Below, piece by piece: positions 3,358-20,465 of a stretch of 64,000 nucleotides of DNA. Within the stretch, counting starts at the first letter, position 1, and each line of letters starts with the position of its first letter. The stretch lies in sequence record ON000910.1. One strand, 5' to 3'. The notes beneath the pieces are model-generated. The model was not told the DNA's origin, did no database searches, and saw only the letters and a program-made list of their open reading frames with translations. The position numbers and the translations under genes are program-made.

Positions 3358-3365
3358 AAACTCTC

Positions 3366-4521: not shown

Positions 4522-4528
4522 AAATTCT

Positions 4529-4653
4529 GGAGAGTTAGCTCAGTCTGGTAGAGCAAAAGAATGTTAAAGAATACTGACAAGCATTCATGCTGCAAACCTT
4601 AATAACTAGGTAAATCTTTTTGTCACGTGGTTCAAATCCCGTACTCTCCACCA
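4529..4653 (+). ncRNA. tRNA chimera 4: scaffold with AAAGA/TCTTT anticodon stem enclosing a 54-nt expanded loop
   Basis: GGAGAGT/ACTCTCC-ACCA, GCTC/GAGC D arm, TTCAAAT T loop; insert contains GAATAC-TG-ACA-A-GCATTC-AT-GCTGCAA. Confidence 0.78.
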
Positions 4654-5037: not shown

Positions 5038-5115
5038 GGCCCTATAGCTCAACACGGTTAGAGCAACCGACTCATAATCGGTAGGTTACAGGTTCGAGTC
5101 CTGTTGGGGTCACCA
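5038..5115 (+). tRNA. tRNA-CAT (elongator Met or Ile2)
   Basis: Full cloverleaf, loop CTCATAA, ACCA end. Confidence 0.9.
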
Positions 5116-5194
5116 AAAATAAATTGAAAAAGTTGTTGACAGACGTTTCATCAACGTGTAGTATACACATTATCAACTACACGAGGAAAACATT

Positions 5195-5425
5195 ATGTCA
5201 CATAAATTGCTAGTTATCACATCAATGCACGGTTGCTACGTCGATTACGATTTCAGAACTGAAATGTTTGACAGATACATGTGTGATGTTGTGATTCCGA
5301 ACGACTCTGTTGTTTTGTACTCGGGTACAGTTTCAATAGATGAAATTCAAGCAGTTGCGAACGAATGTTACGCTGACATCAAGATTGAAGAAGTCAGTGA
5401 TGATGTTTTTGACAGCTATCTTTAA
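5195..5425 (+). CDS. Hypothetical early protein
   Basis: Upstream TTGACA...TAGTAT promoter and GAGG SD. Confidence 0.7.
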   Translation: MSHKLLVITSMHGCYVDYDFRTEMFDRYMCDVVIPNDSVVLYSGTVSIDEIQAVANECYADIKIEEVSDDVFDSYL

Positions 5426-5429
5426 AAAT

Positions 5430-5669
5430 GCCGCTAACTGGCGTACAATACACAGTGTATTCCCAACATTAGTGCAGACGTAGGCTCGCAACCTACGTTG
5501 GTACCGAATCACTGGGACCGAGTAGAAAGTGCATGTGAGATGTCGAAGTCTTGTATGTAGAAATAACGCTCGGCTGCTCTGAAATGCTGATTAGCTCTTA
5601 CTTCGAAACTCTAATTGGGTGGAAGAGGTGTTGTGTTTGACGTGTGTTCGATTCACACGAGCGGCGCCA
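5430..5669 (+). ncRNA. 240-nt tRNA-like RNA with tmRNA-type architecture
   Basis: GCCGCT/AGCGGC-GCCA acceptor, CGTGTG-TTCGATT-CACACG T arm, AACTGG D-like loop, ACAATAC/GTGTTGT helix enclosing ~175 nt. Confidence 0.65.
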
Positions 5670-5682
5670 AGAGGAAATTATA

Positions 5683-6207
5683 ATGAAACCATTGAAGTTC
5701 GTTGAAGCGTTCTCTAAAGAAGAACGTGCTGCTATGACGATTGAAGAACGTAGCAGACTTCGTAAAATATATAACGAACGCTATCAAGAGTATGTTGATA
5801 AGTACATCAATGTATTCACTCGAAAAGACTTTCGAAGAGAGCGTTGCTGGGTTATTCTTGCACGATGTAAAAAGACTGGTGAAATCATCGGTCGAATTGA
5901 AAATAGTTTTAGTATGGGATGGTCTAAAGAACGTGTTCGTGTTATTCGACCGTATCTAAACGGTAATTTCACGGGCGATGATCGCTTCTCTAAAGCTGAG
6001 TACAACAAAGCGTGTGCTGAGTACATAACTCATCATGAGAAACAAGTAAAGTCTCTCAGAGAAGCTTACAAAGACACTCACGACGTTTTCTTATCTCGTG
6101 TGGGTAGTAAGAACTGTCCTGTTTCTATTGATTGGGATACGTATTACAATAAAAAAGACAAACGAAACTTTGAATATCGAAATTTGAAGTTCAAAACGAA
6201 ATCATAA
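5683..6207 (+). CDS. Hypothetical basic protein
   Basis: GAGG SD, ATG 5683; the track start lies within the T arm of the ncRNA. Confidence 0.7.
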   Translation: MKPLKFVEAFSKEERAAMTIEERSRLRKIYNERYQEYVDKYINVFTRKDFRRERCWVILARCKKTGEIIGRIENSFSMGWSKERVRVIRPYLNGNFTGDDRFSKAEYNKACAEYITHHEKQVKSLREAYKDTHDVFLSRVGSKNCPVSIDWDTYYNKKDKRNFEYRNLKFKTKS

Positions 6208-6238
6208 ATACTTTCTTTTAGAGTTTAGAGGAAGAAGT

Positions 6239-6535
6239 ATGAAAACGTTTGGTGAATTCCTAATTGAATTTGGTGGCGGCGGATTTCAATCTGGCGCTGC
6301 TGATGACAGTAGATTTTTAGAAGAACTTGTTCGCAGGTTGCAGAAGAAGCAAGTTCAAATTAGTAAGAAAACTGATTCTGTGAATTGGGGTCATGGTAAA
6401 ATCACGGTTAGAGATGGGAAAGTTCGTTATATTACGAAATATGATGGCCCGCGTGATTTCAAAGAGTTTAGTAGTACACGTGAATTCATGGATGCGTTCA
6501 TGAAAGGTGACTACACTCAATTGCAAGACAAATAA
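6239..6535 (+). CDS. Putative internal head protein
   Basis: N-terminus MKTFGEFLIE resembles the T4 capsid-targeting sequence; late promoter CATAAATA at 6203. Confidence 0.6.
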   Translation: MKTFGEFLIEFGGGGFQSGAADDSRFLEELVRRLQKKQVQISKKTDSVNWGHGKITVRDGKVRYITKYDGPRDFKEFSSTREFMDAFMKGDYTQLQDK

Positions 6536-6540
6536 TTTAT

Positions 6541-6656
6541 AGTCGGGTAGCTCAGTGGTAGAGCACGAAGAATGATACTGACAAGTATCGCTCCAGCACT
6601 CCTTCAATTGCCTGTTAAGCACGTGGTCGCTGGTTCGAATCCAGCCCCGACTACCA
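6541..6656 (+). ncRNA. tRNA chimera 5: Asn(GTT) scaffold with 41-nt insert in the anticodon stem
   Basis: Removing 6568-6608 gives CGTGC-CTGTTAA-GCACG and a 75-nt cloverleaf with ACCA; insert contains TGATAC-TG-ACA-A-GTATCG-CT-CCAGCAC. Confidence 0.82.
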
Positions 6657-6682
6657 TTTTTGATAAACTAGTGAGGTATAAC

Positions 6683-6919
6683 ATGAGCGGAACATTTAAT
6701 ATCAACAAAACGTTACTGACTCCGAAACAATTGCGCAATCTAACAGATGAGCGTCTAAATGAATATCGCAAGTCGTTTCGTAAGCCTCTTGGTTTTTTGA
6801 AGCATCTGAACGATACAAACGAATTGACTTCAGATCAACACAAGAAATTCGTTGAGCTTAATAAGCACTATAACGACGAAATCCTTGTTGAAATGAACAA
6901 GCGAAAACACTTAGGTTAA
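6683..6919 (+). CDS. Hypothetical protein
   Basis: GAGG SD before ATG 6683. Confidence 0.65.
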   Translation: MSGTFNINKTLLTPKQLRNLTDERLNEYRKSFRKPLGFLKHLNDTNELTSDQHKKFVELNKHYNDEILVEMNKRKHLG

Positions 6920-7187
6920 TAAAATCGCAGAAAGTTGAAATTTTTTTCAATTTTCTGCGAAAATATCGCAAATCGTCAGATTTAGTGTTATAAGTACTAT
7001 AAAGAAACAAAACAAATTTTAATTTTTATTTCAAGAGAGCATTCAATGACGCATTCGTTTACACATTCATCTGAGACATTACGCAGCGATTTTCTGCGCT
7101 CAGAATTCGTGTATCTAGCGAATCCGATTGCGAACCAGAAGTGGGATACCCTCTTGTAGTCCGATAGTATAACATAGAAGTATACTT

Positions 7188-7212
7188 GAGGACGCAAATA
7201 GCGTCCTTTTTT
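7188..7212 (+). terminator. Rho-independent terminator
   Basis: GGACGC-AAATA-GCGTCC followed by T7. Confidence 0.8.
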
Positions 7213-7290
7213 TATGGGCGCAATAAAAGTCAAAAATTTTGTTTAACGTACTTTGATTACAGAGTATGATAAACAAAGTTAAAGAACAAA

Positions 7291-7364
7291 CGGGACGTGG
7301 CGTAAAGGTAGCGTTCATGCTTTGGGAGCATGTGGTAAGAGTTCGAGTCTCTTCGTCCCGACCA
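7291..7364 (+). tRNA. tRNA-Pro(TGG)
   Basis: Cloverleaf, loop TTTGGGA, ACCA. Confidence 0.9.
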
Positions 7365-7373
7365 ATTTAAAAT

Positions 7374-7450
7374 CCGTGACTAGCTCAATCTGGTAGAGTA
7401 CTCCGTTTGGGGCGGAGAAGTTAAGCGTTCGAATCGCTTGTCACGGACCA
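7374..7450 (+). tRNA. tRNA-Pro(TGG)
   Basis: Cloverleaf, loop TTTGGGG, ACCA. Confidence 0.9.
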
Positions 7451-7458
7451 GTTTTAAT

Positions 7459-7534
7459 GCCCGATTAGCTCAATTGGAAGAGCAGCGTCCTACGAAGGCG
7501 AAGGTTACAAGTTCGAATCTTGTATTGGGTGCCA
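7459..7534 (+). tRNA. tRNA-Arg(ACG)
   Basis: Cloverleaf, loop CTACGAA, GCCA. Confidence 0.9.
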
Positions 7535-7740
7535 GTTAGTGTTGTTTGATTGAAGCTCGTTTTCGCACATTCCCGAAACTGCTTCTACGATTTGATACGC
7601 TTAGGACCGTATCTCGTTAAGTACTGTCGAGATGATAGAATTTAGCGAACTTTTTCATAAATTAGTGTTTATGATGTCTTGAGCGAGTGTTAATATTAAC
7701 ACATAGAAAATGAAAACGTTAAGTTCTTCAAAATAAATTC

Positions 7741-7868
7741 AAAAAGATGTTTACAATGACGAAAACATCATGTACAATAGAGAAAAGCGAAATATCATTC
7801 AAAGCTGAATGAAAAGTTTTTCAAAAAAAGATGTTTACAACGATATAAACATCATGTACAATAGAGAA
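7741..7868 (+). promoter_or_regulatory. Two tandem near-identical T4-type early promoters
   Basis: AAAAAGATGTTTACAA-N-AAACATCATGTACAATAGAGAA at ~7741 and ~7826 (GTTTAC -35, TACAAT -10). Confidence 0.8.
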
Positions 7869-7872
7869 GAAC

Positions 7873-8091
7873 ATGAATGACATAATTAAAGATGTGTCAA
7901 AGTTGACACTGAAAGAAAACGAACGTGTAGTGTTTAGAGTTGATGTCGGTGATTTACCAGCATCGAAAGCTAATCAGTATATACAAAATTTAGTCGATTT
8001 ATTGAAAGAAGCGGGAATTACTAACTCAATTGTTATTCCGTCATCAATAGAAATTTCCGTAATCGATGAAAACGAATTAATGCGCAAGTAG
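7873..8091 (+). CDS. Small protein resembling a segment of T4-type portal (VDVGDLPASKANQY)
   Basis: ORF behind tandem early promoters; similarity to recalled portal motif FYIDVGNLP..KA.QY. Confidence 0.55.
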   Translation: MNDIIKDVSKLTLKENERVVFRVDVGDLPASKANQYIQNLVDLLKEAGITNSIVIPSSIEISVIDENELMRK

Positions 8092-8159
8092 CCCAATCTG
8101 GCAGAGGCACTGGTCTTAGAAACCAGAAGTTAAGAGTTCGAATCTCTTCTTGCGTACCA
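8082..8159 (+). tRNA. tRNA-Leu(TAG), short variable loop
   Basis: Loop CTTAGAA, 5-nt variable region, ACCA. Confidence 0.85.
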
Positions 8160-8160
8160 T

Positions 8161-8235
8161 GCACCCTTAGCTTATCAGGAAAAGCGGCGGATTGAAGTCC
8201 CGCAGTGCTCGGTTCGATTCCGAGGGGGTGCACCA
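8161..8235 (+). tRNA. tRNA-Phe(GAA)
   Basis: Cloverleaf, loop TTGAAGT, one anticodon-stem mismatch, ACCA. Confidence 0.8.
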
Positions 8236-8323
8236 TATTATAGCTTGTTTGTAAGAGTTAAATCAAGCAAGGGATTTTAGTTTTGAGTTATTTAGCAAAC
8301 GCTCTTAACGTGAAAATCAAATT

Positions 8324-8398
8324 GGGTCGTTAGTATAACGGTAGTACATCTGGCTTTTAACCAGAAGGGTGAGAGTTCGAATCTCTTGCGACCCACCA
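8324..8398 (+). tRNA. tRNA-Lys(TTT)
   Basis: Loop CTTTTAA, ACCA. Confidence 0.9.
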
Positions 8399-8409
8399 GT
8401 TTTTATAAT

Positions 8410-8486
8410 GCGTCGGTAGCTCATCATGGAAGAGCAGGGAGCTTTTAACTCTCAGGTGTCTGGTTCGAGTCCAGAGCGGCGTACCA
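8410..8486 (+). tRNA. tRNA-Lys(TTT)
   Basis: Loop CTTTTAA, ACCA; G7-G66 mismatch. Confidence 0.85.
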
Positions 8487-8549
8487 AATTAGATACATTG
8501 TGTATCGCTTTGCAAGTTAGATAGCTTGCAAATCAATATACAATTTAAT

Positions 8550-8624
8550 TCTCCCGTGGACTAACGGTAGGTCATCACCCTTTCAAGGTGAAGTGCGCGA
8601 GTTCGAATCTCGTCGGGAGAACCA
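8550..8624 (+). tRNA. tRNA-Glu(TTC)
   Basis: Loop CTTTCAA, ACCA. Confidence 0.88.
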
Positions 8625-8630
8625 TATTCT

Positions 8631-8716
8631 GGAGCGTACGTCTCAAGGTGAGACAGGGGACTGTAAATCCCTGACCCTTAACGGGTAGAGAGGTTCGATT
8701 CCTCTACGCTCCACCA
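8631..8716 (+). tRNA. tRNA-Tyr(GTA)
   Basis: Loop CTGTAAA, long variable arm, ACCA. Confidence 0.9.
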
Positions 8717-8721
8717 GTTTT

Positions 8722-8809
8722 AGCTTGCATACTGCAATTTAACTTAATCTATTGATCGCTCGGCGGGCATTGCTCAGACAGCGATAAACAGACCAAAGAA
8801 CGCAAGCTG
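8722..8809 (+). ncRNA. Stand-alone GCAA-motif RNA
   Basis: A-GCTTGC-AT-ACTGCAA ... GCAAGC-TG. Confidence 0.7.
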
Positions 8810-8818
8810 TTGAATAAT

Positions 8819-8895
8819 TGCGGAGTAGAGCAGCGGTCAGCTCGCCAGTTTCATAAGCTGGAGGTCAGTGGTTCGAATCCACTCTCACGCATCCA
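8819..8895 (+). tRNA. tRNA-Met(CAT), initiator-like D arm, irregular acceptor stem
   Basis: GAGC/GCTC D stem, loop TTCATAA, extra A in 3' acceptor strand, TCCA; lacks the GGG/CCC pairs of fMet. Confidence 0.7.
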
Positions 8896-8902
8896 AACAA
8901 AT

Positions 8903-9001
8903 GGAAGGCTTAGCCGAAAGATTCTGGGTAGCGGCAACGGTCTTGAAAACCGTCGGTCACCGGGAGGTGATGTTAGGGTTCGAATCCCTAGTCTTCCGCC
9001 A
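8903..9001 (+). tRNA. tRNA-Ser(TGA)
   Basis: Loop CTTGAAA, long variable arm, GCCA; enlarged D loop. Confidence 0.88.
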
Positions 9002-9064
9002 ATTAGTTAACCGGGAAGTTTAGTCACTTAACCGATTAACAGTGCGCTGAAATGCGCACACTTT

Positions 9065-9138
9065 AGTCCCTTAGCTCAACGGTAGAGCGTGCGACCGATA
9101 ATCGCTTGGTAAGAGTTCGATTCTCTTAGGGACTACCA
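9065..9138 (+). tRNA. tRNA-Ile(GAT)
   Basis: Loop CCGATAA (C33), ACCA. Confidence 0.85.
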
Positions 9139-9144
9139 AATTTT

Positions 9145-9218
9145 AGGGGCATGATGTAAAGGCAGCATGACGGATTCCAAACCCGTTCGTTAGAGTTCGA
9201 ATCTCTATGCCCCTGCCA
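9145..9218 (+). tRNA. tRNA-Trp(CCA)
   Basis: Loop TTCCAAA, GCCA. Confidence 0.88.
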
Positions 9219-9223
9219 GTTTA

Positions 9224-9282
9224 AGTAATCTTACAGCAAACAATACAAAACTTTTATTTGGAAAAAGCAAAAAGGATTACTG
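9224..9282 (+). ncRNA. Minimal GCAA-motif RNA
   Basis: A-GTAATC-TT-ACAGCAA ... GATTAC-TG with an A-rich loop. Confidence 0.7.
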
Positions 9283-9292
9283 TTTAAATTTA

Positions 9293-9368
9293 GGATCGCT
9301 AACTCAATGGTTAGAGTGCTCGCCTGTTAAGCGAGGAGTTCCGAGTTCGAGTCTCGGGCGGTCCGCCA
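9293..9368 (+). tRNA. tRNA-Asn(GTT)
   Basis: Loop CTGTTAA, GCCA. Confidence 0.92.
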
Positions 9369-9438
9369 AATTCGGAGAGTCACTACCGTTAAGTGTGAAC
9401 TTGAAAAAAACAAAGCAACTACTTTAAGTTGTCTTTGG

Positions 9439-9514
9439 GGAGCCGAGGTGTAAAAGGTTGCATGTCTCCCTGTCACGGAGAAGGTAGCGGGTTCGAAACC
9501 CGTCGGTTCCGCCA
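9439..9514 (+). tRNA. tRNA-Asp(GTC)
   Basis: Loop CTGTCAC, GCCA. Confidence 0.9.
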
Positions 9515-9533
9515 AAGATAATTTAAGAACAAT

Positions 9534-9607
9534 TGGGGATTGGTGTAAAGGCAGCATAACGTACTTTGAATGCGTTGGTATCAGTTCGAATCTGTTATCC
9601 CCAGCCA
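9534..9607 (+). tRNA. tRNA-Gln(TTG)
   Basis: Loop CTTTGAA, T1-A72, GCCA. Confidence 0.9.
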
Positions 9608-9615
9608 AATACCAT

Positions 9616-9732
9616 AGAGTGTTTTCAGCAAACAATTTACTAATATTCTTCTGATGAAAAGAAAAGTTCGGGGTTCGATTCCTCTTCAGTGTCGGTATCA
9701 CTGGTCTGGACGACGCTAGTAATAACACTCAG
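9616..9732 (+). ncRNA. GCAA-motif RNA enclosing a T-loop module (YrlA-like layout)
   Basis: A-GAGTGT-TT-TCAGCAA ... ACACTC-AG; internal GGGG-TTCGATT-CCTC and CAGTG/CACTG hairpins. Confidence 0.72.
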
Positions 9733-9736
9733 TTAC

Positions 9737-9811
9737 GCTCCTGAAGCATTGATGGCGATGCAGCGGTCTTGTAAACCGCAGAATTCGGTTCGATTCCGAA
9801 CGGGAGCACCA
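9737..9811 (+). tRNA. tRNA-Thr(TGT)
   Basis: Loop CTTGTAA, ACCA. Confidence 0.9.
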
Positions 9812-9836
9812 TATTGATTAGAGAGTGTTATCATGA

Positions 9837-9844
9837 TATAAATA
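9837..9844 (+). promoter_or_regulatory. T4-type late promoter
   Basis: TATAAATA upstream of 9875. Confidence 0.8.
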
Positions 9845-9874
9845 TTCATGTAACTACATTTTAGAGGTAATAAC

Positions 9875-10150
9875 ATGTCTATTAAAACATTTTCTGAATA
9901 TCTTAACGAAGCAAAGCATCGTGGGTCTGGCGTAGACACTCATGACGGGAAGATTCCGTATGTATACGCTGACAGTAAAGACGCTGCTGCATTTGCTGAT
10001 TTCGTATCGTCAATAGGTATGAAGCTTGATTCGAACGGTGAATTGAAGCTTTCTACACGAGATAAAGTACGAAAGTTCTTCTCAGAGCTTGATCAAGAAG
10101 CAACTAATTTCATGCTTCATGGCAACTTTGATATTATTGAATATATGTAA
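9875..10150 (+). CDS. Putative internal head protein
   Basis: MSIKTFSEYLNE capsid-targeting-like N-terminus; late promoter; GAGG SD. Confidence 0.62.
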   Translation: MSIKTFSEYLNEAKHRGSGVDTHDGKIPYVYADSKDAAAFADFVSSIGMKLDSNGELKLSTRDKVRKFFSELDQEATNFMLHGNFDIIEYM

Positions 10151-10165
10151 AAATTGGTGATTGTA

Positions 10166-10375
10166 ATGGTATATATTTCTGTATGGTGTGAATATGACAT
10201 TGGTGGGGATTTCGGTGGCAACAATAACGAAGATGTTTTTTCCGTTAGTGAAGAATTATCTAATGAAGAAGTTGAAGCAAAAGTTGCTGAATATATTTCT
10301 GACATTGTTGGTGAGCCGATTGAAGAACTTGAAGGTTTATACGGTTGGGAATATATTTCAATCACACAGTTGTAA
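10166..10375 (+). CDS. Hypothetical acidic protein
   Basis: ORF with GGTGA SD. Confidence 0.6.
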   Translation: MVYISVWCEYDIGGDFGGNNNEDVFSVSEELSNEEVEAKVAEYISDIVGEPIEELEGLYGWEYISITQL

Positions 10376-10382
10376 AAAATAT

Positions 10383-10457
10383 GGGCCGTTAGCTTAATTG
10401 GGAAAGCGCCTCACTTGCAATGAGGAAGATAGGGTTCGACTCCCTGCGTGTCCACCA
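10383..10457 (+). tRNA. tRNA-Ala(TGC), irregular acceptor stem
   Basis: Loop CTTGCAA, G3-U70, ACCA. Confidence 0.8.
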
Positions 10458-10531
10458 AATTTCGAACACATGAGCGTAGACTCTCTTTACTACCATCGTC
10501 TACACTAGCTCATGGTTCGAAACTTTTCAAT

Positions 10532-10607
10532 GCGCTGTTAGCTCAATTGGAAGAGCACGTCCCTTCTAAGGATGGGGTTATGAGTTCGAATCTCATACGG
10601 CGTGCCA
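10532..10607 (+). tRNA. tRNA-Arg(TCT)
   Basis: Loop CTTCTAA, GCCA. Confidence 0.92.
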
Positions 10608-10670
10608 TATTAAGCTCTTATCATGTGACGAATGATACTTTGCTTCGGCATATCACGAGCATGGTGAGAG

Positions 10671-10787
10671 AGACAATATACAGCAAACAATTGAAATTAC
10701 TTAAAAGAAGTGATGATCTTAACCTGGGCTGATTTTAACCTGAGCTTGCTTGGGCGCAGCTTGAAAGGAAAGATTCTCTCTGTCTAG
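10671..10787 (+). ncRNA. GCAA-motif RNA
   Basis: A-GACAAT-AT-ACAGCAAACAATT ... TGTC-TAG (4 of 6 bp). Confidence 0.6.
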
Positions 10788-10789
10788 AA

Positions 10790-11127
10790 ATAGTCAGATA
10801 GGCGCGTCGCTGAAACAGACGATATTTGCTTATTGAGAATCAATAAGCTAGTCAACTCCGATTTATGCAAAAGACGAAAAAACACTTCGGTATTGTCTGT
10901 ACTTAATTCGTCGGAAACGACACTGTAGCCGAAAGGCAAGTTTACTAACTTAGTTGTTAGTCGTGATACAGGAAGTATCATGTGGCATTATTATGAACGT
11001 TTCTAGTCATCGTCATGTAAAACAATCAAAACTAAGCAGAGGTAACAGTACCCACTATGTGGTTCCTCACTCAGACCATGAATATATGGTGTCAGCCAGT
11101 GTGCGATTAAATGAGTAATTACTGCAA
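10790..11127 (+). ncRNA. Candidate ~340-nt structured RNA with GAAA tetraloops, ending in a permuted GCAA motif
   Basis: GTCG-GAAA-CGAC, GCC-GAAA-GGC, GCTTATTG/CAATAAGC, TGATAC/GTATCA; TCACTC-AG ... GAGTAA-TT-ACTGCAA. Confidence 0.5.
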
Positions 11128-11129
11128 TT

Positions 11130-11205
11130 GGTGACGTAGCTCAAGTGGCAGAGCCACGCTTTCATACGGCGTAAGATCCGATTTCGAGTATCGGTGTCAC
11201 CTCCA
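11130..11205 (+). tRNA. tRNA-Met(CAT)
   Basis: Loop TTCATAC, TCCA end. Confidence 0.82.
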
Positions 11206-11230
11206 AATTCAAACAAAGAGGTTAAGAAGC

Positions 11231-11388
11231 ATGACTACTTTACACTAAGCAAGGGCAACATACGCGATAAGATTCGCTGTGTTGAAAATCGTCTCGCAGA
11301 AGAGACCAACCCGTTCTTTATAAGAACACTTACTGTAGAGCTTACGAATCTACGTGCAATACGTGATTTGTTCGACGCTTCAGATTAA
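11231..11388 (+). pseudogene. Frameshifted small ORF
   Basis: SD AGAGG and ATG ACT ACT TTA CAC TAA; inserting one T joins it to the open frame TLSKGNIRDK...DASD*. Confidence 0.45.
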
Positions 11389-11392
11389 CAAT

Positions 11393-11466
11393 GCGGGTAT
11401 GATGTAATGGTAGCATGACGTCCTTCCAAGTCGTTCGTCTCGGTTCGAGTCCGTGTACCCGCTCCA
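11393..11466 (+). tRNA. tRNA-Gly(TCC)
   Basis: Loop CTTCCAA, U73, TCCA. Confidence 0.9.
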
Positions 11467-11472
11467 AATTTT

Positions 11473-11546
11473 GGTCCCTTAGTATAATGGCAGTACGTCT
11501 CTTTTACACAGAGAAAGAAGTGGCTCGATTCCACTAGGGACTACCA
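11473..11546 (+). tRNA. tRNA-Val(TAC)
   Basis: Loop TTTACAC, T loop CTCGATT (C54), ACCA. Confidence 0.85.
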
Positions 11547-11569
11547 TTCTTTATGATGAGAAATAAATT

Positions 11570-11809
11570 ATGACGCCTGCATTACTTGAAACTCATGAAT
11601 ACGTAAACCACAACCAAATCGAAAAGCTACAGCAAATGGACAGACTTATGTTTGATTGTTGGCGTGCTGGGTATAAACGTGGCAAGATTTTAGAGCTTGC
11701 ATTGTCGATTGAGTCTTCAACAACCGAAGCAGACATCGAAATTTATTTCAAAAATATGTTTACAAGAGAACTATCGGCTGATAGTATCTACTTAAAGAAA
11801 ACTGTATGA
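11570..11809 (+). CDS. Hypothetical protein
   Basis: ORF between tRNAs with GAG SD. Confidence 0.6.
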   Translation: MTPALLETHEYVNHNQIEKLQQMDRLMFDCWRAGYKRGKILELALSIESSTTEADIEIYFKNMFTRELSADSIYLKKTV

Positions 11810-11961
11810 CGGAGTAGTGCTCCGACCGAATGACACACGCAAATGAGTCCGGTTGACAAACGTTATATGTCCCAAAGTATTGCAGGTAGCGACGGCGGTG
11901 TTGCTAGTAGATTTATCTATTTCTCCAAGACATAATGCAAGCTTTTAAAGTGTACTTTGGT

Positions 11962-12038
11962 GTGGCAGTGGGTGAAGTGGAAATACCCCCGGGTTGTGAT
12001 TCCGGAAGATGCGGGTTCGATCCCCGTCTGTCACCCCA
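11962..12038 (+). tRNA. tRNA-His(GTG)
   Basis: Loop TTGTGAT, C73, CCA; encoded -1 base is T, not G. Confidence 0.85.
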
Positions 12039-12050
12039 AAGTACATTTAT

Positions 12051-12124
12051 GCTCGAATCGTATAATGGCAGTATGACGGATTGCAAATCCGCAGGTCAGG
12101 GTTCGATTCCCTGTTCGAGCTCCA
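12051..12124 (+). tRNA. tRNA-Cys(GCA)
   Basis: Loop TTGCAAA, U73, TCCA. Confidence 0.9.
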
Positions 12125-12332
12125 GAAAAGACGATGCACAAGTTGGATGTGCAAAGGGGTCGGTTATGGTTCAACGCTTTATGCGTATAGGGTTAATCGC
12201 CTAGAACTGAGCATGTTTGAGTTGCTACTCACGAATGTAGTGATGAGTGCGTAAGAAGCCCGTAGCTAGTATAATGAGTTGATAACTCGGCAGCCTAGCA
12301 GTGTCGCCAACATCGACATAACGACACATAAT

Positions 12333-12409
12333 GCGCACGTGGTCCAATTGGCAGAGGCATGAGGCTTAAAATCTCAGGGATGGCGGTTCGAATCCGCCCG
12401 TGCGTACCA
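12333..12409 (+). tRNA. tRNA-Leu(TAA), short variable loop
   Basis: Loop CTTAAAA, 5-nt variable region, ACCA. Confidence 0.85.
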
Positions 12410-12524
12410 AATTCTAGCATAAGCCGCATTCTAACGAAGCTAGACTACCGCCGTTGAAAAACGGTCTCAGCCGAGCGAAAGCTGACAGGCGTTAGGGATT
12501 AAAGAGTTGCGGCAGCTTATTCAA

Positions 12525-12601
12525 GCCCAACTAGTCCAATTGGCAGAGGCGCTAGTTTCAAACACTAGATGATCCGAGTTCGAATCTCGGGTTGGGCACC
12601 A
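12525..12601 (+). tRNA. tRNA-Leu(CAA), short variable loop
   Basis: Loop TTCAAAC, 5-nt variable region, ACCA. Confidence 0.85.
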
Positions 12602-12697
12602 AATTCACTTAGCAACGCGAATCGAAAGAGAGTGGATAGACCTGCTAAGAGTCCCGCTAGGTCTTTAAATTATCTAAAGTGGATCTGCGAAGCGCGT

Positions 12698-12732
12698 GGC
12701 ACACGTCAGCAATAAGAGCAAATATGTGTCTG
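12698..12732 (+). ncRNA. Minimal GCAA-motif hairpin
   Basis: GGCACA-CG-TCAGCAA ... TGTGTC-TG. Confidence 0.6.
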
Positions 12733-12769
12733 AGCATGAGAGCAGCATGCCACTAATTGATGAGACGTT

Positions 12770-12858
12770 GGAAGCATGGTCTAAAGGTATGACAGCACCC
12801 TGCTAAGGTGTCGGACGTTAATAGCGTTCTCTGGGTTCGACTCCCAGTGCTTCCGCCA
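12770..12858 (+). tRNA. tRNA-Ser(GCT)
   Basis: Loop CTGCTAA, long variable arm, GCCA. Confidence 0.9.
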
Positions 12859-16886: not shown

Positions 16887-16951
16887 GTGTTGACTTCCTG
16901 TTGTTAAACCTGTATCATGTATTTATCGGAAATAACTAACGAGAATTTACT

Positions 16952-17299
16952 ATGTTTGTAATGATTGATGATATGCGTGATATCGATAATTTCACTGCGC
17001 CTGAAATTTCCGCAGATCAGAAGCTTGTTTTGCGTACGTATGAAGACGGTATGAAATTCGTCAAACATACGAATCTTACAGATATTACTTTATTCATGGA
17101 CAATGATCTAGGCGGTGCTCTTGGTCATGAGGGATATGATATTCTCTCTCATGCAATTGATCATCGTAACTTCCCACGCACAGTTGTTCTAGTAACGAGT
17201 AACCCTGTTGCTCACTCTAAGATGACTATGATGTTGATGAACACACTTCAATATAAACGTGTGGGTTCTATCTTTATGAGGCAAGATACATGCACTTAA
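16952..17299 (+). CDS. Cyclic-phosphate-processing receiver-like (cREC) domain protein
   Basis: IDD.R, LF.DNDLG, GYDIL, V.SNPV motifs of the stand-alone phage receiver family. Confidence 0.65.
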   Translation: MFVMIDDMRDIDNFTAPEISADQKLVLRTYEDGMKFVKHTNLTDITLFMDNDLGGALGHEGYDILSHAIDHRNFPRTVVLVTSNPVAHSKMTMMLMNTLQYKRVGSIFMRQDTCT

Positions 17300-17655
17300 A
17301 CGTAATTTCTGCTGCTGCAAATGCAATTAGAGTCACTTTACCAAATGGCGAAGAGAGGGATATTGTTGTTGCAGATAGCTGCCATTTTGGTCGAAACATG
17401 CAAGGCGTGTTTAAGCTATTGAAAGAACTTGGCTGTACATATGAACATCGAAGCGAACTTGGTGATCGTGGGCAGGGATTCATCAATTATTGTGGTGAAT
17501 ACTTCAATCGCGCTGATGCTTATGAACTCGCGAAAGAAAGCGGTCAACCATTCAATGATGGGTACACGCTACCAGATATTGACGGTGATGGTCGTCTGCG
17601 TCTCGATAGTTCATGCATTCGACATTTTTCAAAACCAATTAAGGAATATCTATGA
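17290..17655 (+). CDS. Conserved phage hypothetical protein
   Basis: HF..N..., QGF....G.YF.R..AY.LA..SGQ pattern. Confidence 0.65.
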   Translation: MHLNVISAAANAIRVTLPNGEERDIVVADSCHFGRNMQGVFKLLKELGCTYEHRSELGDRGQGFINYCGEYFNRADAYELAKESGQPFNDGYTLPDIDGDGRLRLDSSCIRHFSKPIKEYL

Positions 17656-17987
17656 GCAATCTATATGATATTTTAACTCAACGAGTCAAGCAGAATCGTT
17701 CAAAACGCGAAGAATTGTTCGTCGTTGAAATGCGTAAATCAATTGAGCGTAAGATCGGTGGTGTTTCGGGATTTCAGTTCCCGATTACGATTCAAGTTAA
17801 TCTTGAACGAAATGAATGTTGTGATGAAATGATGACTCTCATCAAGAGTGTCATGCGACGTGAGGGATTTCACAATTTCGATGCACAGTTCGGTCATTAT
17901 TCTGGCGACCCTCGTGATGTGAGAGACTATTCATATTCTTTTGTGAAATTGACAATTCGAGAAAATAAACAAGCGGGGTTTCAATGA
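17652..17987 (+). CDS. Hypothetical protein
   Basis: ATGA-coupled ORF. Confidence 0.65.
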   Translation: MSNLYDILTQRVKQNRSKREELFVVEMRKSIERKIGGVSGFQFPITIQVNLERNECCDEMMTLIKSVMRREGFHNFDAQFGHYSGDPRDVRDYSYSFVKLTIRENKQAGFQ

Positions 17988-18298
17988 TGCTTAGTCATGA
18001 CGAACTTTCAAAACAAATTAATCAACGAGAGCAAATAGCTCGTAAAGTTCTTAGCGAACATTATAATGGCGAGTGTGAAAAAGAATTCACACATGCAGTT
18101 GAAAACGGGGCTTTTTTCCCGATTAAAATCAAAGTACCAATTCACATTAGTGATTGTGATAAGAAAGGTTCTGGTTTCATTCGTGCATTCTTTGAACAGT
18201 ACGGCTACCGAAATTTACGCACTTGCTATGAATCTGGTGGTTATGTATCTGTTGAGATATACAAAAATGGTACGAATATCAGTCGTAATTATCGATAA
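17984..18298 (+). CDS. Hypothetical protein
   Basis: ATGA-coupled ORF. Confidence 0.65.
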   Translation: MMLSHDELSKQINQREQIARKVLSEHYNGECEKEFTHAVENGAFFPIKIKVPIHISDCDKKGSGFIRAFFEQYGYRNLRTCYESGGYVSVEIYKNGTNISRNYR

Positions 18299-18301
18299 TT
18301 G

Positions 18302-18394
18302 AAAAAAAGTGTTTACACGCATTAAAATTCGCGTATAATCACTTCATCAAAGACATTTTACAGCAATTAATTATGAGGAAATGAACAATGTCAG
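18302..18394 (+). promoter_or_regulatory. Early promoter plus GCAA-motif leader enclosing SD and AUG of the Ro60-like gene
   Basis: GTTTAC (18311)-17 bp-TATAAT (18334); A-GACATT-TT-ACAGCAA-TTAATT-ATGAGGAAATGAAC-AATGTC-AG, with ATG 18388 inside the 3' strand. Confidence 0.8.
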
Positions 18395-19824
18395 TATTTA
18401 TGAACGCAATGCAAACAAACGATTCACGCACAGCAAACGGTGCAGTTACTCACAGCACTTCAGGTAACGAGTGTCTAAACTTGTTCTTCGGTATTGCTGC
18501 TATGCGTGGCAACGATCAGTCTAAAACACTGTTCGGTCGTGCGTTTGCAGAAAACCCAGAACTAGCGACACGCATTCTTTTGTGGTCTCGTGATGTTCGC
18601 GGTGGTGCGGGTGAACGTGGTACTTTCCGTACTCTATTCACTAAACTTTGTAATGAACAGCCTGACGTAGCTCGTGCTGTAATGTCGAAAATTCCAGAAC
18701 TAGGTCGTTACGATGACTTAATTTCTGCTTTCGGTACACGTCTTGAACAAGATGCGATCACAATGTGGTCGAACGCAATTGTCAATGACAAGAATGGTCT
18801 TGCTGCGAAGTGGTTCCCACGTGAAAACAGCAAAAACGGTCATGTGTTCAAGCGCACAATCAAGTCTCTTGGCGTGACTGCGAAGCAGTGGCGTAAGATT
18901 CTGTCGCTTCTGTCTGACACTGTTGAGCAGAAGATGTGTGCGCAAAAATGGGATGCAATCGACTTCGGTAAGTTGCCTTCTGTAGCGTCTGCTCGTTATC
19001 AACAAGCATTCGGTCGTAACGCTTCAGCTCGTTACACAAGCTACATCGAGTCACTTCAAAAAGGTGAAGCGAAGATCAACGCTGGCGCATTGTTCCCATA
19101 CGATGTCGTTAAGAGCGTTAGTCACGGTAATGCGTCTGTAGCGAACGAGCAATGGAAAGCTCTGCCAAACTACATGGAAGGTTCTGATGAGCGCATCATC
19201 CCTGTTGTTGACGTGTCTGGCTCTATGAGCACGCCAATCAACGCAGGTACTGATCATTCAGGTGTGACTTGTAAGCAAGTTGCAATGTCTCTGGGTGTAT
19301 ATGTTGCTGAACGCAACGAAGGCATCTTCAAAGATCAATTCATTTCGTTCTCAAGCGACCCGCACTTCCACCAGTTGCGCGGTAGCTCATTGAAAGAGCG
19401 TCTTGATAACATGAATCGTTCAGGCGAAGACATGAGTACGAACATCGGTAAGTGCTTTGATGTTCTGCTAGAGCGTGCGAAGCGTGCAAATCTTTCACAA
19501 GAAGATATGCCAACCAAGTTGCTTATCATGAGTGACATGGAATTCGATCAAGCAAACACTGGTGGTGGTTGGTACGGTCGCGGTGAACCTGCGAACTTCG
19601 ATGCAATCAAAGCCAAGTACGCACGTGCTGGTTATGAAATGCCACAACTGGTCTTCTGGAACATTCGTGGTCGTCTTGGCAACGTTCCGGTTAAAGCTGG
19701 TGAAGCGGGTACTGCACTGGTATCTGGTTGTAGCCCATCTATCTTGACTTCACTGTTGGGTGGTGAGCTTGAGCCAATCAAGATCATGATGAAAACTGTA
19801 GGCGTCGAACGCTACAGCTTTTAA
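18388..19824 (+). CDS. DUF2828 family TROVE/Ro60-like protein with C-terminal vWA (MIDAS) domain
   Basis: T.NGA..HSTSG, RDVRGG.GER..FR, AAKW.PRE, KINAGALFPYD, PVVDVSGSM, SDMEFD, P.LVFWN motifs. Confidence 0.85.
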   Translation: MSVFMNAMQTNDSRTANGAVTHSTSGNECLNLFFGIAAMRGNDQSKTLFGRAFAENPELATRILLWSRDVRGGAGERGTFRTLFTKLCNEQPDVARAVMSKIPELGRYDDLISAFGTRLEQDAITMWSNAIVNDKNGLAAKWFPRENSKNGHVFKRTIKSLGVTAKQWRKILSLLSDTVEQKMCAQKWDAIDFGKLPSVASARYQQAFGRNASARYTSYIESLQKGEAKINAGALFPYDVVKSVSHGNASVANEQWKALPNYMEGSDERIIPVVDVSGSMSTPINAGTDHSGVTCKQVAMSLGVYVAERNEGIFKDQFISFSSDPHFHQLRGSSLKERLDNMNRSGEDMSTNIGKCFDVLLERAKRANLSQEDMPTKLLIMSDMEFDQANTGGGWYGRGEPANFDAIKAKYARAGYEMPQLVFWNIRGRLGNVPVKAGEAGTALVSGCSPSILTSLLGGELEPIKIMMKTVGVERYSF

Positions 19825-19873
19825 ATAAGTGATAAGGGCGGCATTGTGCTGCCCTTTTTTGTAAGAGGTGAAA

Positions 19874-20398
19874 ATGTTCGATTGGGAAGCGATAGAAACA
19901 GCTATCAATAACAGTCATCCAAATAGCACAATATACGTTGGGTGTGATAGTAAGCGTAAAAGTGACATGATTAGTTACGCGACTGTGATCATAATTCATC
20001 TTGAAGGTAGTAAAGGTGCTCAAGTGTTTAAAGCAGTTGAGACTGAACCTGCATACTTATCATGTAAAGATGGTATCAGAAGTCGATTGATGAATGAAGT
20101 ATACAAAGCGGGTGAAACTGCACTAATGGTTAAGCCAATGTGCGGTACTAGAGGCTTTGAAGTTCACGTTGACATCAACCCTGACCCCACACACAAATCT
20201 CACGTTGCCTATAACGAAGCTAAAGGTACTATATTGGGATATGTTGGTCAAGAGCCCGTGTTCAAACCTGATGCGTTTGCTGCGTCTTGTGCTGCTGATT
20301 ACGACGCAGTTCGAAGGGCAGATAAAATCGCTAAACGAAAAGAACTTAGACGAGCTAAACGAAAAGCAAAGAAACAAAAAACAAAAGGGCGCAAATAG
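19874..20398 (+). CDS. YkuK/DUF458 RNase H-like protein
   Basis: IYVGCDS, YATVIIIH, RLMNEV, EVHVDIN, KPDAFAASCAAD motifs; basic C-terminal tail. Confidence 0.75.
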   Translation: MFDWEAIETAINNSHPNSTIYVGCDSKRKSDMISYATVIIIHLEGSKGAQVFKAVETEPAYLSCKDGIRSRLMNEVYKAGETALMVKPMCGTRGFEVHVDINPDPTHKSHVAYNEAKGTILGYVGQEPVFKPDAFAASCAADYDAVRRADKIAKRKELRRAKRKAKKQKTKGRK

Positions 20399-20465
20399 CG
20401 CCCTTTTTTACGGCTATACTAAATACTGTCATATATTCTAATTTCACATACATGGAATAACGCTA

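What the first reader, a model, noticed from the sequence alone, without database searches (positions are those of the whole stretch)
16952..20398. RNA end-processing gene neighbourhood: cREC receiver, TROVE-vWA, YkuK RNase H-like
The Ro60-like gene is followed directly by an RNase H-fold YkuK/DUF458 gene with acidic residues (GCDS, NEV, HVDIN, AAD) and a basic tail. It is preceded within 1.1 kb by a cyclic-phosphate-processing receiver-like gene. Established: Ro60 partners with PNPase and lies in rtcB RNA-repair operons, and cREC domains were predicted in RNA-repair contexts. Inference: these are the enzymatic partners acting on RNAs tethered through the motif.
Basis: inference. Interest (0 to 1): 0.7.

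Follow-up and report, generated by a model that had tools for sequence, protein, structure and literature searches.

The report
Phage Ro60-like module with YkuK nuclease
A large Vibrio phage carries a Ro60-like RNA-binding ring next to an RNase H-fold YkuK nuclease, and across unrelated phages these two genes recur together with a previously unannotated family of tRNA-shaped RNAs, which points to an undescribed phage RNA-handling particle; the nearby cREC gene is only loosely linked to it.

Summary
The window is Vibrio phage XZ1, a KVP40-like T4-type phage. All three domain calls hold: cREC (16952-17299), a TROVE/Ro60-like ring plus vWA domain (18388-19824) and YkuK/DUF458 (19874-20398). Each keeps its family-invariant residues.

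The predicted fold of the 478-aa protein matches solved Ro60 structures over its full length.

The TROVE-YkuK pairing is not restricted to this lineage. It recurs within 6 kb in 7 of 17 YkuK lineages. Still, TROVE is about ten times more widespread than YkuK (711 versus 76 phage records).

The strongest association of phage YkuK is with tRNA gene arrays, and in some phages with CCA-adding enzyme.

The cREC link is weak: 3 of 17 lineages.

There are three separate transcription-unit-like blocks, and no RtcB or RNA ligase is adjacent.

Unexpected result: five ~120-nt tRNA-like RNAs lie at the head of the window's tRNA array. They have a conserved structured insert where the anticodon loop should be. 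They belong to a family that sits beside TROVE and/or YkuK in several unrelated phages.

Best reading: a Ro60-type particle that handles tRNA-shaped RNAs, with YkuK as its nuclease. All evidence is genomic context, so this is inference.

The parts
3777..3899 (+). tRNA-like RNA, family member 1; its acceptor stem is extended to about 21 bp by the flanks
   Evidence: Scores 99.9 bits with covariance model R1. The sequence was read. ARAGORN calls it only when introns are allowed.
4157..4280 (+). tRNA-like RNA, family member 2; its acceptor stem is extended to about 17 bp
   Evidence: Scores 102 bits with R1. It is 80-100% conserved in about 50 KVP40-like genomes, where it is mostly unannotated.
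4404..4519 (+). tRNA-like RNA, family member 3
   Evidence: Rfam tRNA 56.1 bits, with a 46-nt insert in place of the anticodon loop. R1 score 79.4 bits.
4529..4653 (+). tRNA-like RNA, family member 4, with an encoded CCA end
   Evidence: Rfam tRNA 50.1 bits with a 49-nt insert. R1 score 90.1 bits.
6541..6656 (+). tRNA-like RNA, family member 5, with an encoded CCA end
   Evidence: Rfam tRNA 49.8 bits with a 54-nt insert. R1 score 101.2 bits.
5038..12858 (+). array of 26 canonical tRNA genes
   Evidence: ARAGORN and Rfam.
16890..16918 (+). sigma-70-like promoter match ahead of the cREC block
   Evidence: 10 of 12 consensus positions. This is a consensus match only.
16952..17299 (+). cREC (cyclic-phosphate-processing receiver-like) protein, 115 aa
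   Evidence: PF20274 at 6.7e-15. It keeps all six residues that are invariant in 60 relatives (D6, D7, D50, D52, G61, N84).
17290..18298 (+). three small overlapping ORFs (121, 111 and 104 aa) of unknown function, co-oriented with cREC
   Evidence: PHROG hits only, all of unknown function. No Pfam hit. No homologues in any fetched locus outside the KVP40 group.
18312..18339 (+). sigma-70-like promoter match ahead of the TROVE gene
   Evidence: 11 of 12 consensus positions.
18388..19824 (+). Ro60-like protein: helical TROVE-type ring plus a vWA domain with an intact MIDAS motif, 478 aa
   Evidence: PF11443 plus PF25043. phrog_850 'RNA-binding protein'. AF2 model with pLDDT 76.9. Foldseek top 13 hits are all Ro60, E about 1e-7, TM about 0.55. 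MIDAS residues D275, S277, S279, T351 and D383 are invariant in 28 sequences.
19834..19856 (+). terminator-like hairpin plus T-run between the TROVE and YkuK genes
   Evidence: 10-pair stem with 6 GC pairs and a T-run.
19874..20398 (+). YkuK/DUF458 RNase H-like protein, 174 aa, with a basic C-terminal helix
   Evidence: PF04308 at 4.1e-17. D25, E75, D100 and D142 are invariant in 26 homologues. AF2 model with pLDDT 94. Only weak fold matches to RNase H-superfamily nucleases.
20383..20407 (.). palindromic GC-rich hairpin at the end of the YkuK gene, ahead of the tail-fibre genes
   Evidence: 10-pair stem; the scan reports it on the minus strand. Tail-fibre genes start at 20466.

Best explanation
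**Proposal.** The Ro60-like ring protein (18388-19824) and the YkuK nuclease (19874-20398) are parts of a phage-encoded ribonucleoprotein system. It handles tRNA-shaped RNAs.

**Shown**
- The protein has the Ro60 fold with an intact metal-binding MIDAS site.
- YkuK keeps the four acidic residues expected of a two-metal RNase H-type active site.
- The two genes recur together in unrelated phages.
- Both recur beside a family of ~120-nt tRNA-like RNAs. These have an acceptor stem (two thirds of copies end in an encoded CCA), D and T arms, and a conserved structured insert in place of the anticodon loop.
- Five copies of this RNA sit at the head of this phage's tRNA array.

**Inferred**
- The tRNA-like RNAs play the part that Y RNAs play for cellular Ro60. 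They would bind the ring and tether or gate it.
- YkuK would be the nuclease that acts on RNAs threaded through or held by the ring, in the place PNPase holds in bacterial Ro60 particles.
- The substrates would be phage or host tRNAs, or tRNA precursors, that are misfolded, damaged or unprocessed at their ends.

**cREC.** cREC (16952-17299) is at most an accessory. It could open cyclic-phosphate ends. Its link to the other two genes is weak.
For: **Identity and fold**
- Ro60-like fold and domain calls.
- YkuK catalytic residues invariant. High-confidence model.

**TROVE-YkuK recurrence**
- Adjacent in Vibrio phage EniLVp02 and metagenomic L008, with different flanking genes.
- Adjacent in reversed order in L041.
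- Within 3-6 kb in the Ci1-like, Milchi-like, L057, L146 and cyanophage BUCT-ZZ01 lineages.
- 7 of 17 YkuK clusters at 60% identity have TROVE within 6 kb.
- Of 9 isolate lineages examined, 5 have a clear TROVE within 10 kb and a sixth has a distant relative there. The binomial P is 3e-3 for five and 3e-4 for six, at a 13% chance rate.

**RNA family**
- Covariance-model scores are bimodal: 59-113 bits for the family, 58 bits or less for ordinary tRNAs.
- 96% of pair cells are paired against 65% in shuffles. 19 of 22 pairs show double changes.
- In loci fetched before the RNA-seeded scan, the family occurs only in TROVE-positive loci. It is absent from the tRNA-rich TROVE-negative YkuK loci (Fisher P=0.01).
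- It lies 0.06-0.8 kb from TROVE in Ci1, L002, L133, BUCT-ZZ01, L184, L197, L203, L220 and L229.
- Of 68 RNA-seeded IMG/VR stretches, 14 hold TROVE, 9 hold YkuK and 4 hold both, always on the RNA's strand.

**Precedent**
- Y-like RNAs are encoded beside Ro60 in more than 250 bacteria and phages, and they mimic tRNA (PMC4201824).
- The Thermus phage phiLo Ro60 binds two adjacent Y-like RNAs and host PNPase (PMC12135203).

**YkuK and tRNA metabolism**
- 2.0 tRNA genes per kb lie within 1 kb of YkuK.
- A CCA-adding enzyme abuts YkuK in the Ci1 lineage.
- PTH2 is next to YkuK in phage RpAliso.
Against: - All the evidence is genomic context. No binding, cleavage or expression data exist.
- TROVE occurs in 711 phage records and YkuK in 76, so most Ro60-like proteins work without YkuK.
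- Only 3 of 41 TROVE-seeded loci with 5-kb flanks have YkuK.
- Many YkuK genes sit in tRNA arrays with no TROVE nearby.
- Both genes may simply be drawn to the variable tRNA region of T4-type genomes. That would inflate their proximity.
- In this window the RNAs lie 12-14.6 kb from TROVE.
- The RNAs lack the defining Y-RNA features:
  - They score 32 bits against an Rfam YrlA gathering score of 69, and that hit is an artefact of two neighbouring tRNA-like genes.
  - The CGAA-type motif is found in only 7 of 61 copies.
- A terminator-like hairpin separates TROVE from YkuK.
- The IMG/VR loci are phylogenetically clumped. One YkuK cluster holds 60 of about 100 loci.
- The fold search for YkuK gave no match below E=1e-3.
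Confidence: 0.4

Rival explanations
1. YkuK is a maturation or turnover nuclease for the phage's own tRNA-array transcripts, including the tRNA-like RNAs. It works independently of the Ro60-like protein. TROVE is a separate RNA chaperone or quality-control factor that happens to live in the same tRNA-linked region.
For: - tRNA density is 2.0 per kb within 1 kb of YkuK, decaying to 0.5 per kb at 5-10 kb. It is only 0.13-0.30 per kb around TROVE.
- 20 of 21 YkuK loci with 5-kb flanks have a tRNA within 5 kb.
- YkuK sits inside tRNA arrays in RpAliso, DLP_6 and BUDD, with no TROVE within 10 kb.
- A CCA-adding enzyme directly follows YkuK in the Ci1 lineage.
Against: - It does not explain adjacent TROVE-YkuK pairs that lie several kb from any tRNA (window; EniLVp02; L008).
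- It does not explain why, in the big tRNA-rich YkuK lineage, the one locus with TROVE (L041) is also the only one with the special RNA.
Confidence: 0.25
2. The three genes are counter-defence tools with separate targets.
- The Ro60-like ring with its RNAs would sequester or damp a host RNase such as PNPase, as reported for phage phiLo.
- cREC would destroy cyclic-nucleotide or cyclic ADP-ribose immune signals.
- YkuK would degrade a host nucleic acid.
For: - The phiLo Ro60 with its Y-like RNAs attenuates host PNPase activity (PMC12135203).
- The authors who defined cREC predict it acts on cADPR or 2',3'-cyclic nucleotides within NAD+-centred conflict systems (PMC7824862 and PMC9503650).
- The same window carries the anti-CBASS phosphodiesterase Acb1 (2655-3110), a nicotinamide phosphoribosyltransferase (50374-51867) and a weak PARP-like protein.
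Against: - PADLOC was not searched, so defence and anti-defence family matches were not tested.
- YkuK's tight link to tRNA arrays, CCA-adding enzyme and PTH2 points to tRNA metabolism.
- cREC is absent from all 68 RNA-seeded loci.
Confidence: 0.2
3. There is no functional module. The genes are neighbours only because this stretch, between the tRNA array and the tail-fibre genes, is a hyperplastic region of T4-type genomes where accessory genes pile up.
For: - There are three separate promoter- or terminator-delimited blocks.
- The three ORFs between cREC and TROVE are lineage-specific.
- TROVE is about ten times more widespread than YkuK.
- Typical YkuK neighbours in the largest lineage are unrelated enzymes: GIY-YIG, CHAP, RNR and ClpP.
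Against: - The pairing recurs in 7 of 17 YkuK lineages, with changing gene order and changing flanks.
- It is also seen in a cyanophage of another family, Kyanoviridae.
- The shared RNA family is hard to explain by chance.
Confidence: 0.15

Closest known systems
Bacterial Ro60 (Rsr)-Y RNA-PNPase particle (RYPER) and the rsr-yrlBA-rtcBA operon of Deinococcus and Salmonella
   Same: - A ring of helical repeats plus a vWA/MIDAS domain (fold match to 2nvo and 1yvr).
- tRNA-mimicking small RNAs are encoded near the protein gene (PMC4201824).
- A ribonuclease acts as the working partner.
   Different: - The sequence family is DUF2828/DUF7788. Pfam TROVE does not match.
- The candidate nuclease is an RNase H-fold YkuK encoded next door, not PNPase.
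- No RtcB or RtcA is present.
- The RNAs have an open acceptor stem, often with CCA. Their extra module sits in the anticodon arm, unlike the permuted YrlA layout.
Thermus phage phiLo Ro60 with Yrl1 and Yrl2 (PDB 9KOP, 9L5Y; PMC12135203)
   Same: - A phage-encoded Ro60-fold protein; it is the second-best fold match.
- Tandem small RNA genes lie beside the protein gene.
- A role in handling host or phage RNA turnover has been proposed.
   Different: - The phiLo RNAs are stem-bulge-stem Y-like RNAs defined by a CGAA motif. That motif is present in only 7 of 61 copies here.
- phiLo uses host PNPase, and no YkuK is reported for it.
Mycobacteriophage and FelixO1-type 'Ro-like RNA-binding protein' (phrog_850)
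   Same: The same protein family by sequence: 31-46% identity over the full length in 711 phage records. phrog_850 matches at 4e-172.
   Different: Those phages have no YkuK by tblastn. Their partner RNAs, where known, are YrlA-like.
Bacillus subtilis YkuK / DUF458 (PF04308), RNase H-like clade E
   Same: Pfam membership holds. The conserved D-E-D-D set includes the extra helix-alpha1 glutamate noted for YkuK (PMC3985635).
   Different: - The phage proteins are embedded in tRNA arrays.
- The KVP40-type protein has a basic C-terminal helix that most relatives lack.
- No function is known for any member of the family.
cREC systems of jumbo phages (Iyer et al. 2021; 2022)
   Same: Stand-alone cREC domain with the conserved aspartates, in a large phage that carries NAD+ salvage genes.
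   Different: The described contexts are RNA ligases, Nudix, sirtuin, 2H and WYL genes. Here the immediate neighbours are three unknown ORFs and the Ro60-like gene. A ligase context was seen only in L009.

Membership tests
Ro60 / TROVE-vWA proteins | Helical-repeat ring followed by a vWA domain, matching solved Ro60 over the full length | tested here: met
   AF2 model with pLDDT 76.9 and pTM 0.73. The Foldseek PDB top 13 hits are all Ro60 (1yvr, 9l5y, 2nvo, 2i91 and others), E from 1e-7 to 6e-5, more than 500 aligned columns, TM 0.45-0.56.
Ro60 / TROVE-vWA proteins | MIDAS metal-site residues in the vWA domain | tested here: met
   D275, S277, S279, T351 and D383 are invariant in 28 homologues.
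Ro60 / TROVE-vWA proteins | Sequence-profile membership (Pfam TROVE, or a significant match to Ro60 chains) | tested here: not met
   Pfam lists only PF11443 and PF25043. A profile of 28 relatives reaches TROVE chains 9l5y and 9kop only at E=1. Single-sequence phmmer finds no Ro60.
Ro60 / TROVE-vWA proteins | Partner Y RNA encoded nearby | tested here: inconclusive
   A tRNA-like RNA family co-localises with the gene in several lineages. It is not YrlA, and binding is untested.
YkuK / DUF458 (PF04308) | Pfam score above the gathering cut-off | tested here: met
   62.9 bits against a cut-off of 25. All 63 homologues carry PF04308.
YkuK / DUF458 (PF04308) | Conserved acidic catalytic set of RNase H-like nucleases | tested here: met
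   D25, E75, D100 and D142 are invariant in 26 sequences. H98 and N102 are nearly invariant.
YkuK / DUF458 (PF04308) | RNase H-like fold | tested here: inconclusive
   The model is confident (pLDDT 94). The best PDB matches (NurA, RNase HII, RT RNase H, RNase HI) are weak: E at least 2.8e-3 and TM at most 0.39. No YkuK structure was found by sequence.
YkuK / DUF458 (PF04308) | Nuclease activity and substrate | not testable with these tools
   None of the papers found reports a tested function for a family member.
cREC (PF20274) | Pfam score above the cut-off, plus the conserved aspartate pair and D-x-D | tested here: met
   56 bits against a cut-off of 27. D6, D7, D50, D52, G61 and N84 are invariant in 60 relatives and present here.
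cREC (PF20274) | Gene context with RNA ligases or NAD+/ADP-ribose enzymes, as in the defining papers | tested here: not met
   The immediate neighbours are unknown ORFs and TROVE. The nearest NAD+ gene (NAMPT) is about 31 kb away. A ligase context was seen only in the unrelated locus L009.
Rtc-type RNA repair operon | RtcB ligase and/or RtcA cyclase adjacent to the Ro60 gene | tested here: not met
   Neither is annotated across the window's equivalent in ValKK3. Not every ORF of the window was scanned by HMM.
YrlA Y-like RNA (Rfam RF02553) | Score at or above the gathering threshold, with the permuted tRNA-like layout | tested here: not met
   The best hit scores 32 bits against 69. It joins the T arm of one element to the D arm of the next, so it is an artefact. 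The CGAA/CGCA motif occurs in 7 of 61 copies.
tRNA (Rfam RF00005), applied to the five odd RNAs | Cloverleaf with a 7-nt anticodon loop | tested here: not met
   Three of the five score 50-56 bits, but with 46-54-nt inserts in the anticodon arm. Standard ARAGORN calls none of them. With introns allowed it calls four of the five, with inconsistent anticodons and intron positions.

The most novel reading that the evidence does not exclude
A previously undescribed phage ribonucleoprotein. A DUF2828-type Ro60-like ring would be joined, through CCA-ended tRNA-like RNAs carrying a conserved anticodon-arm module, to an RNase H-fold YkuK nuclease that takes the place of PNPase. The particle would survey or trim tRNAs during infection. 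This would give the first function for the DUF458 family. It would also give a second, non-permuted solution to Y-RNA tRNA mimicry.
Probability: 0.25. Interest if true: 0.8.

Novelty: new variant of a known kind. Interest (0 to 1): 0.62.

Why it matters
- **Ro60 and Y RNAs.** They are conserved from bacteria to humans, where Ro60 is a major lupus and Sjogren autoantigen. What decides which nuclease the particle recruits is still open.
- **A possible second nuclease partner.** A widespread phage branch of the family (711 phage records) paired with a different nuclease and a different kind of tRNA mimic would broaden the known design space.
- **First context for DUF458/YkuK.** No function has been tested for this family. 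The link to tRNA arrays, CCA-adding enzyme and Ro60-like proteins gives it a concrete, testable context.
- **Annotation.** The tRNA-like RNA family is currently unannotated, or mis-annotated as pseudo-tRNA, tRNA-Cys or 'hypothetical protein', in dozens of phage genomes. It deserves a family model.

Tried and rejected
**Searches that led nowhere**
- Single-sequence and profile searches of PDB sequences gave nothing for YkuK. For TROVE they gave only armadillo-repeat noise.
Two spot checks were made instead.
- Burroughs and Aravind 2016 (PMC5062991) is not held, so I could not check whether it mentions a YkuK-like partner.
- No KVP40 transcriptome paper was found.

**Hypotheses rejected**
- The Rfam YrlA hit at 4490-4554 joins two neighbouring tRNA-like genes and is an artefact.
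- The Y-RNA CGAA motif is not conserved in the new RNA family.
- An intron reading of the inserts fails. ARAGORN's intron models disagree on position and anticodon, and the inserts are far too short for group I introns (that length limit is from my own knowledge).
- The three ORFs between cREC and TROVE have no relatives in other fetched loci.
- The main neighbours of YkuK in its largest lineage are unrelated to RNA.

Full report
**What the window is.** The 4-kb stretch around the finding is 100% identical to Vibrio phage XZ1. It is 84-99% identical to KVP40, ValKK3 and other members of Schizotequatrovirus (Straboviridae). The window holds an array of 26 tRNA genes at 5038-12858. Next come accessory genes, then the finding, then tail-fibre genes from 20466.

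**Observation.** All three domain calls hold, with scores far above the Pfam cut-offs.
- cREC_REC is at 16952-17299.
- DUF2828 plus DUF7788 is at 18388-19824.
- RNaseH_like (YkuK/DUF458) is at 19868-20398.

Their four acidic residues (D25, E75, D100, D142, counted from the ATG at 19874) are invariant in 26 homologues down to 31% identity.

The cREC protein keeps the six residues that are invariant among 60 relatives. Those relatives came from an exhaustive HMMER search.

The vWA part of the 478-aa protein keeps a complete MIDAS motif in all 28 aligned relatives.

**Fold.** Sequence searches of the PDB do not reach Ro60. An AlphaFold2 model (pLDDT 76.9) does. Its 13 best PDB matches are all Ro60: frog, human, Deinococcus Rsr and the Thermus phage phiLo protein. 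They align over more than 500 columns at E about 1e-7. 'Ro60-like' is therefore justified at fold level, not at the level of the Pfam TROVE family.

The YkuK model is very confident (pLDDT 94). It finds only weak matches to RNase H-superfamily nucleases. No YkuK structure turned up by sequence.

**Local anatomy.** The three genes do not look like one operon.
- A promoter-like site (16890-16918) heads cREC and three overlapping small ORFs.
- A second, stronger site (18312-18339) heads the Ro60-like gene.
- A 10-pair hairpin with a T-run (19834-19856) fills most of the 49-nt gap before YkuK.
- No promoter-like site was found in that gap, so YkuK would be read by run-through. This is an inference.
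- The three small ORFs have no relatives outside the KVP40 group in any locus I fetched.

**Distribution of the proteins.** By tblastn against 50,697 phage records, the Ro60-like protein occurs in 711 records. These include FelixO1-like phages, mycobacteriophages where it is annotated 'Ro-like', Listeria, Staphylococcus and Campylobacter phages. YkuK occurs in only 76 records, of which 51 are KVP40-like. Most Ro60-like proteins therefore have no YkuK. The pairing still recurs well beyond this lineage.
- The genes are adjacent, with one small ORF between them and different flanks, in Vibrio phage EniLVp02 and metagenomic L008.
- They are adjacent in the opposite order in L041.
- They lie 3-6 kb apart in Citrobacter phage Ci1 and its relatives, in Pseudomonas phage Milchi and its relatives, and in L057 and L146.
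- They are also 3-6 kb apart in the cyanophage BUCT-ZZ01, which belongs to another family.
- When YkuK proteins are clustered at 60% identity, 7 of 17 clusters have the Ro60-like gene within 6 kb.
- Of nine isolate lineages examined, five have it within 10 kb and a sixth has a distant relative there. The binomial P is 3e-3 and 3e-4 at a 13% chance rate.

**YkuK and tRNA.** The strongest signal for phage YkuK is different.
- Over 79 IMG/VR loci there are 2.0 tRNA genes per kb within 1 kb of YkuK. This falls to 0.5 per kb at 5-10 kb. Around the Ro60-like gene the density is 0.13-0.30 per kb.
- In Ruegeria phage RpAliso, Stenotrophomonas phage DLP_6 and Xanthomonas phage BUDD, YkuK sits inside arrays of 22-37 tRNA genes with no Ro60-like gene within 10 kb.
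- A CCA-adding enzyme directly follows YkuK in the Ci1 lineage. It lies 3-9 kb away in two other lineages.
- PTH2 precedes YkuK in RpAliso.
- One bacterial YkuK, from an Aquificae genome, has only housekeeping neighbours.

**cREC.**
- The link is weak. cREC lies within 7 kb of YkuK in 3 of 17 lineages.
- It occurs in 2 non-KVP40 Ro60-seeded loci.
- It occurs in none of 68 RNA-seeded loci.
- The papers that defined cREC place it with RNA ligases, Nudix, sirtuin and 2H enzymes, and predict that it opens cyclic phosphates.
- That kind of context was seen only in L009, where YkuK, two kinase-like genes, cREC and a ligase lie together.

**An RNA family found on the way.** Rfam called three 'tRNAs' of 113-122 nt that ARAGORN did not call. 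Each has a 46-54-nt insert in place of the anticodon loop. Reading the region showed two more copies, with acceptor stems extended to 17-21 bp.

All five copies share an inner hairpin and a conserved single-stranded stretch after it. So does a 'tRNA-Pseudo-AAC' annotated 0.6 kb downstream of the Ro60-like gene in phage Ci1.

An exact pattern for this module was found in only 6 of 178 loci. All six were Ro60-positive, and the match was always on the same strand as the Ro60-like gene.

A covariance model built from 11 copies separates the family (59-113 bits) from ordinary tRNAs (58 bits or less). It added these copies:
- one in L041, the only Ro60-positive member of the large tRNA-rich YkuK lineage;
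- one in L151;
- a tandem pair directly after the Ro60-like gene in cyanophage BUCT-ZZ01.

A pattern scan of IMG/VR gave 68 stretches. The model confirms 72 copies in them.
- 14 stretches hold the Ro60-like gene, 9 hold YkuK and 4 hold both.
- These genes are always on the RNA's strand, often within 0.06-0.8 kb.
- These figures are lower bounds, because many stretches are cut short.
- Of 24 loci with 2 kb on both sides, 8 have one or both genes within 2 kb.

The helices are well supported. 96% of pair cells are paired, against 65% in shuffles, and 19 of 22 pairs show double changes. Forty of 61 distinct copies end in CCA.

Two cautions apply. The invariant letters of the inner module in that alignment are partly forced by the search pattern. 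The alignment is also fitted to the model.

The family is not YrlA. The one YrlA hit is an artefact, and the CGAA-type motif is rare.

One element is conserved at 80-100% identity in about 50 KVP40-like genomes. There it is mostly unannotated or mislabelled.

**Mechanism.** The best-supported reading is a Ro60-type particle for tRNA-shaped RNAs.
- *Shown:* the fold, the conserved sites and the three-way co-localisation of the Ro60-like gene, YkuK and the tRNA-like RNAs.
- *Established elsewhere:* Y RNAs sit beside Ro60 genes, mimic tRNA and tether Ro60 to a nuclease.
- *Inferred:*
  - these RNAs bind the ring;
  - YkuK is the nuclease partner;
  - the substrates are tRNAs or their precursors;
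  - cREC may clean cyclic-phosphate ends.

I give this reading 0.4. The rivals are:
- YkuK as an independent tRNA-array nuclease (0.25);
- separate counter-defence roles (0.2);
- mere co-residence in a variable genome region (0.15).

**Comparison and novelty.**
- Phage Ro60-like proteins and cREC are already described.
- The papers I could read do not describe the YkuK link, the YkuK-tRNA-array association or the RNA family.
- I could not read Burroughs and Aravind 2016.
- I file the finding as a new variant of a known kind.

Noticed in passing
window 3777-3899, 4157-4280, 4404-4519, 4529-4653, 6541-6656 (+): Five ~120-nt tRNA-like RNAs with a conserved structured insert in place of the anticodon loop. 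They belong to a family found beside Ro60-like and/or YkuK genes in unrelated phages. In public records they are mostly unannotated or labelled pseudo-tRNA.
   Followed up: yes
loci L013-L091, L176-L178 (YkuK-seeded); window 19874-20398: Phage YkuK/DUF458 genes are embedded in tRNA gene arrays: 2.0 tRNA genes per kb within 1 kb. In some lineages they abut a CCA-adding enzyme or PTH2. None of the papers found describes this.
   Followed up: partly
window 4300-4400 (+): A stretch just upstream of the third tRNA-like RNA carries a T-loop-like box and another copy of the inner-hairpin motif (motif at 4374-4381). It may be a degenerate or rearranged sixth copy. The covariance model did not report it above the tRNA background.
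   Followed up: no
window 2655-3110 (+): A 151-aa protein matches Acb1, the anti-CBASS 2H phosphodiesterase (PF23474, 6.8e-46). In ValKK3 it is annotated as 'RNA ligase'.
   Followed up: partly
window about 3365-3400, 3455-3495 and 5120-5140 (+): Repeated A-rich boxes, each followed by a strong -35-like hexamer, read. They look like a reused early-promoter cassette ahead of the tRNA-like RNAs and the tRNA array.
   Followed up: no
window about 3500-3615 (+): Two direct repeats of about 55-60 nt in a non-coding stretch upstream of the first tRNA-like RNA (read). Their function is unknown.
   Followed up: no
window 8820-8891 and 10383-10454 (+): Two Rfam tRNA hits (55.1 and 44.9 bits) that ARAGORN did not call.
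   Followed up: no
window 50374-51867 (-), 35342-36487 (-), 34048-34752 (-): NAD+/ADP-ribose and RNA-linked accessory genes lie in the same window: nicotinamide phosphoribosyltransferase, a weak PARP-like protein (E=1e-4, below the cut-off) and a PhoH-like protein. They matter for the alternative reading of cREC.
   Followed up: no
L009 10001-13748: In an unrelated metagenomic phage, YkuK is followed by two T7-kinase-like genes, a cREC gene and a DNA/RNA ligase. An Rnl2-type ligase, a WYL protein and an HD protein lie 8 kb upstream. This is the clearest RNA-repair-like context seen for YkuK plus cREC.
   Followed up: no
L223 270-941: Five tandem copies of the tRNA-like RNA family lie within 700 nt of a 119,931-bp IMG/VR contig. 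This is the same copy number as in KVP40-like phages.
   Followed up: no
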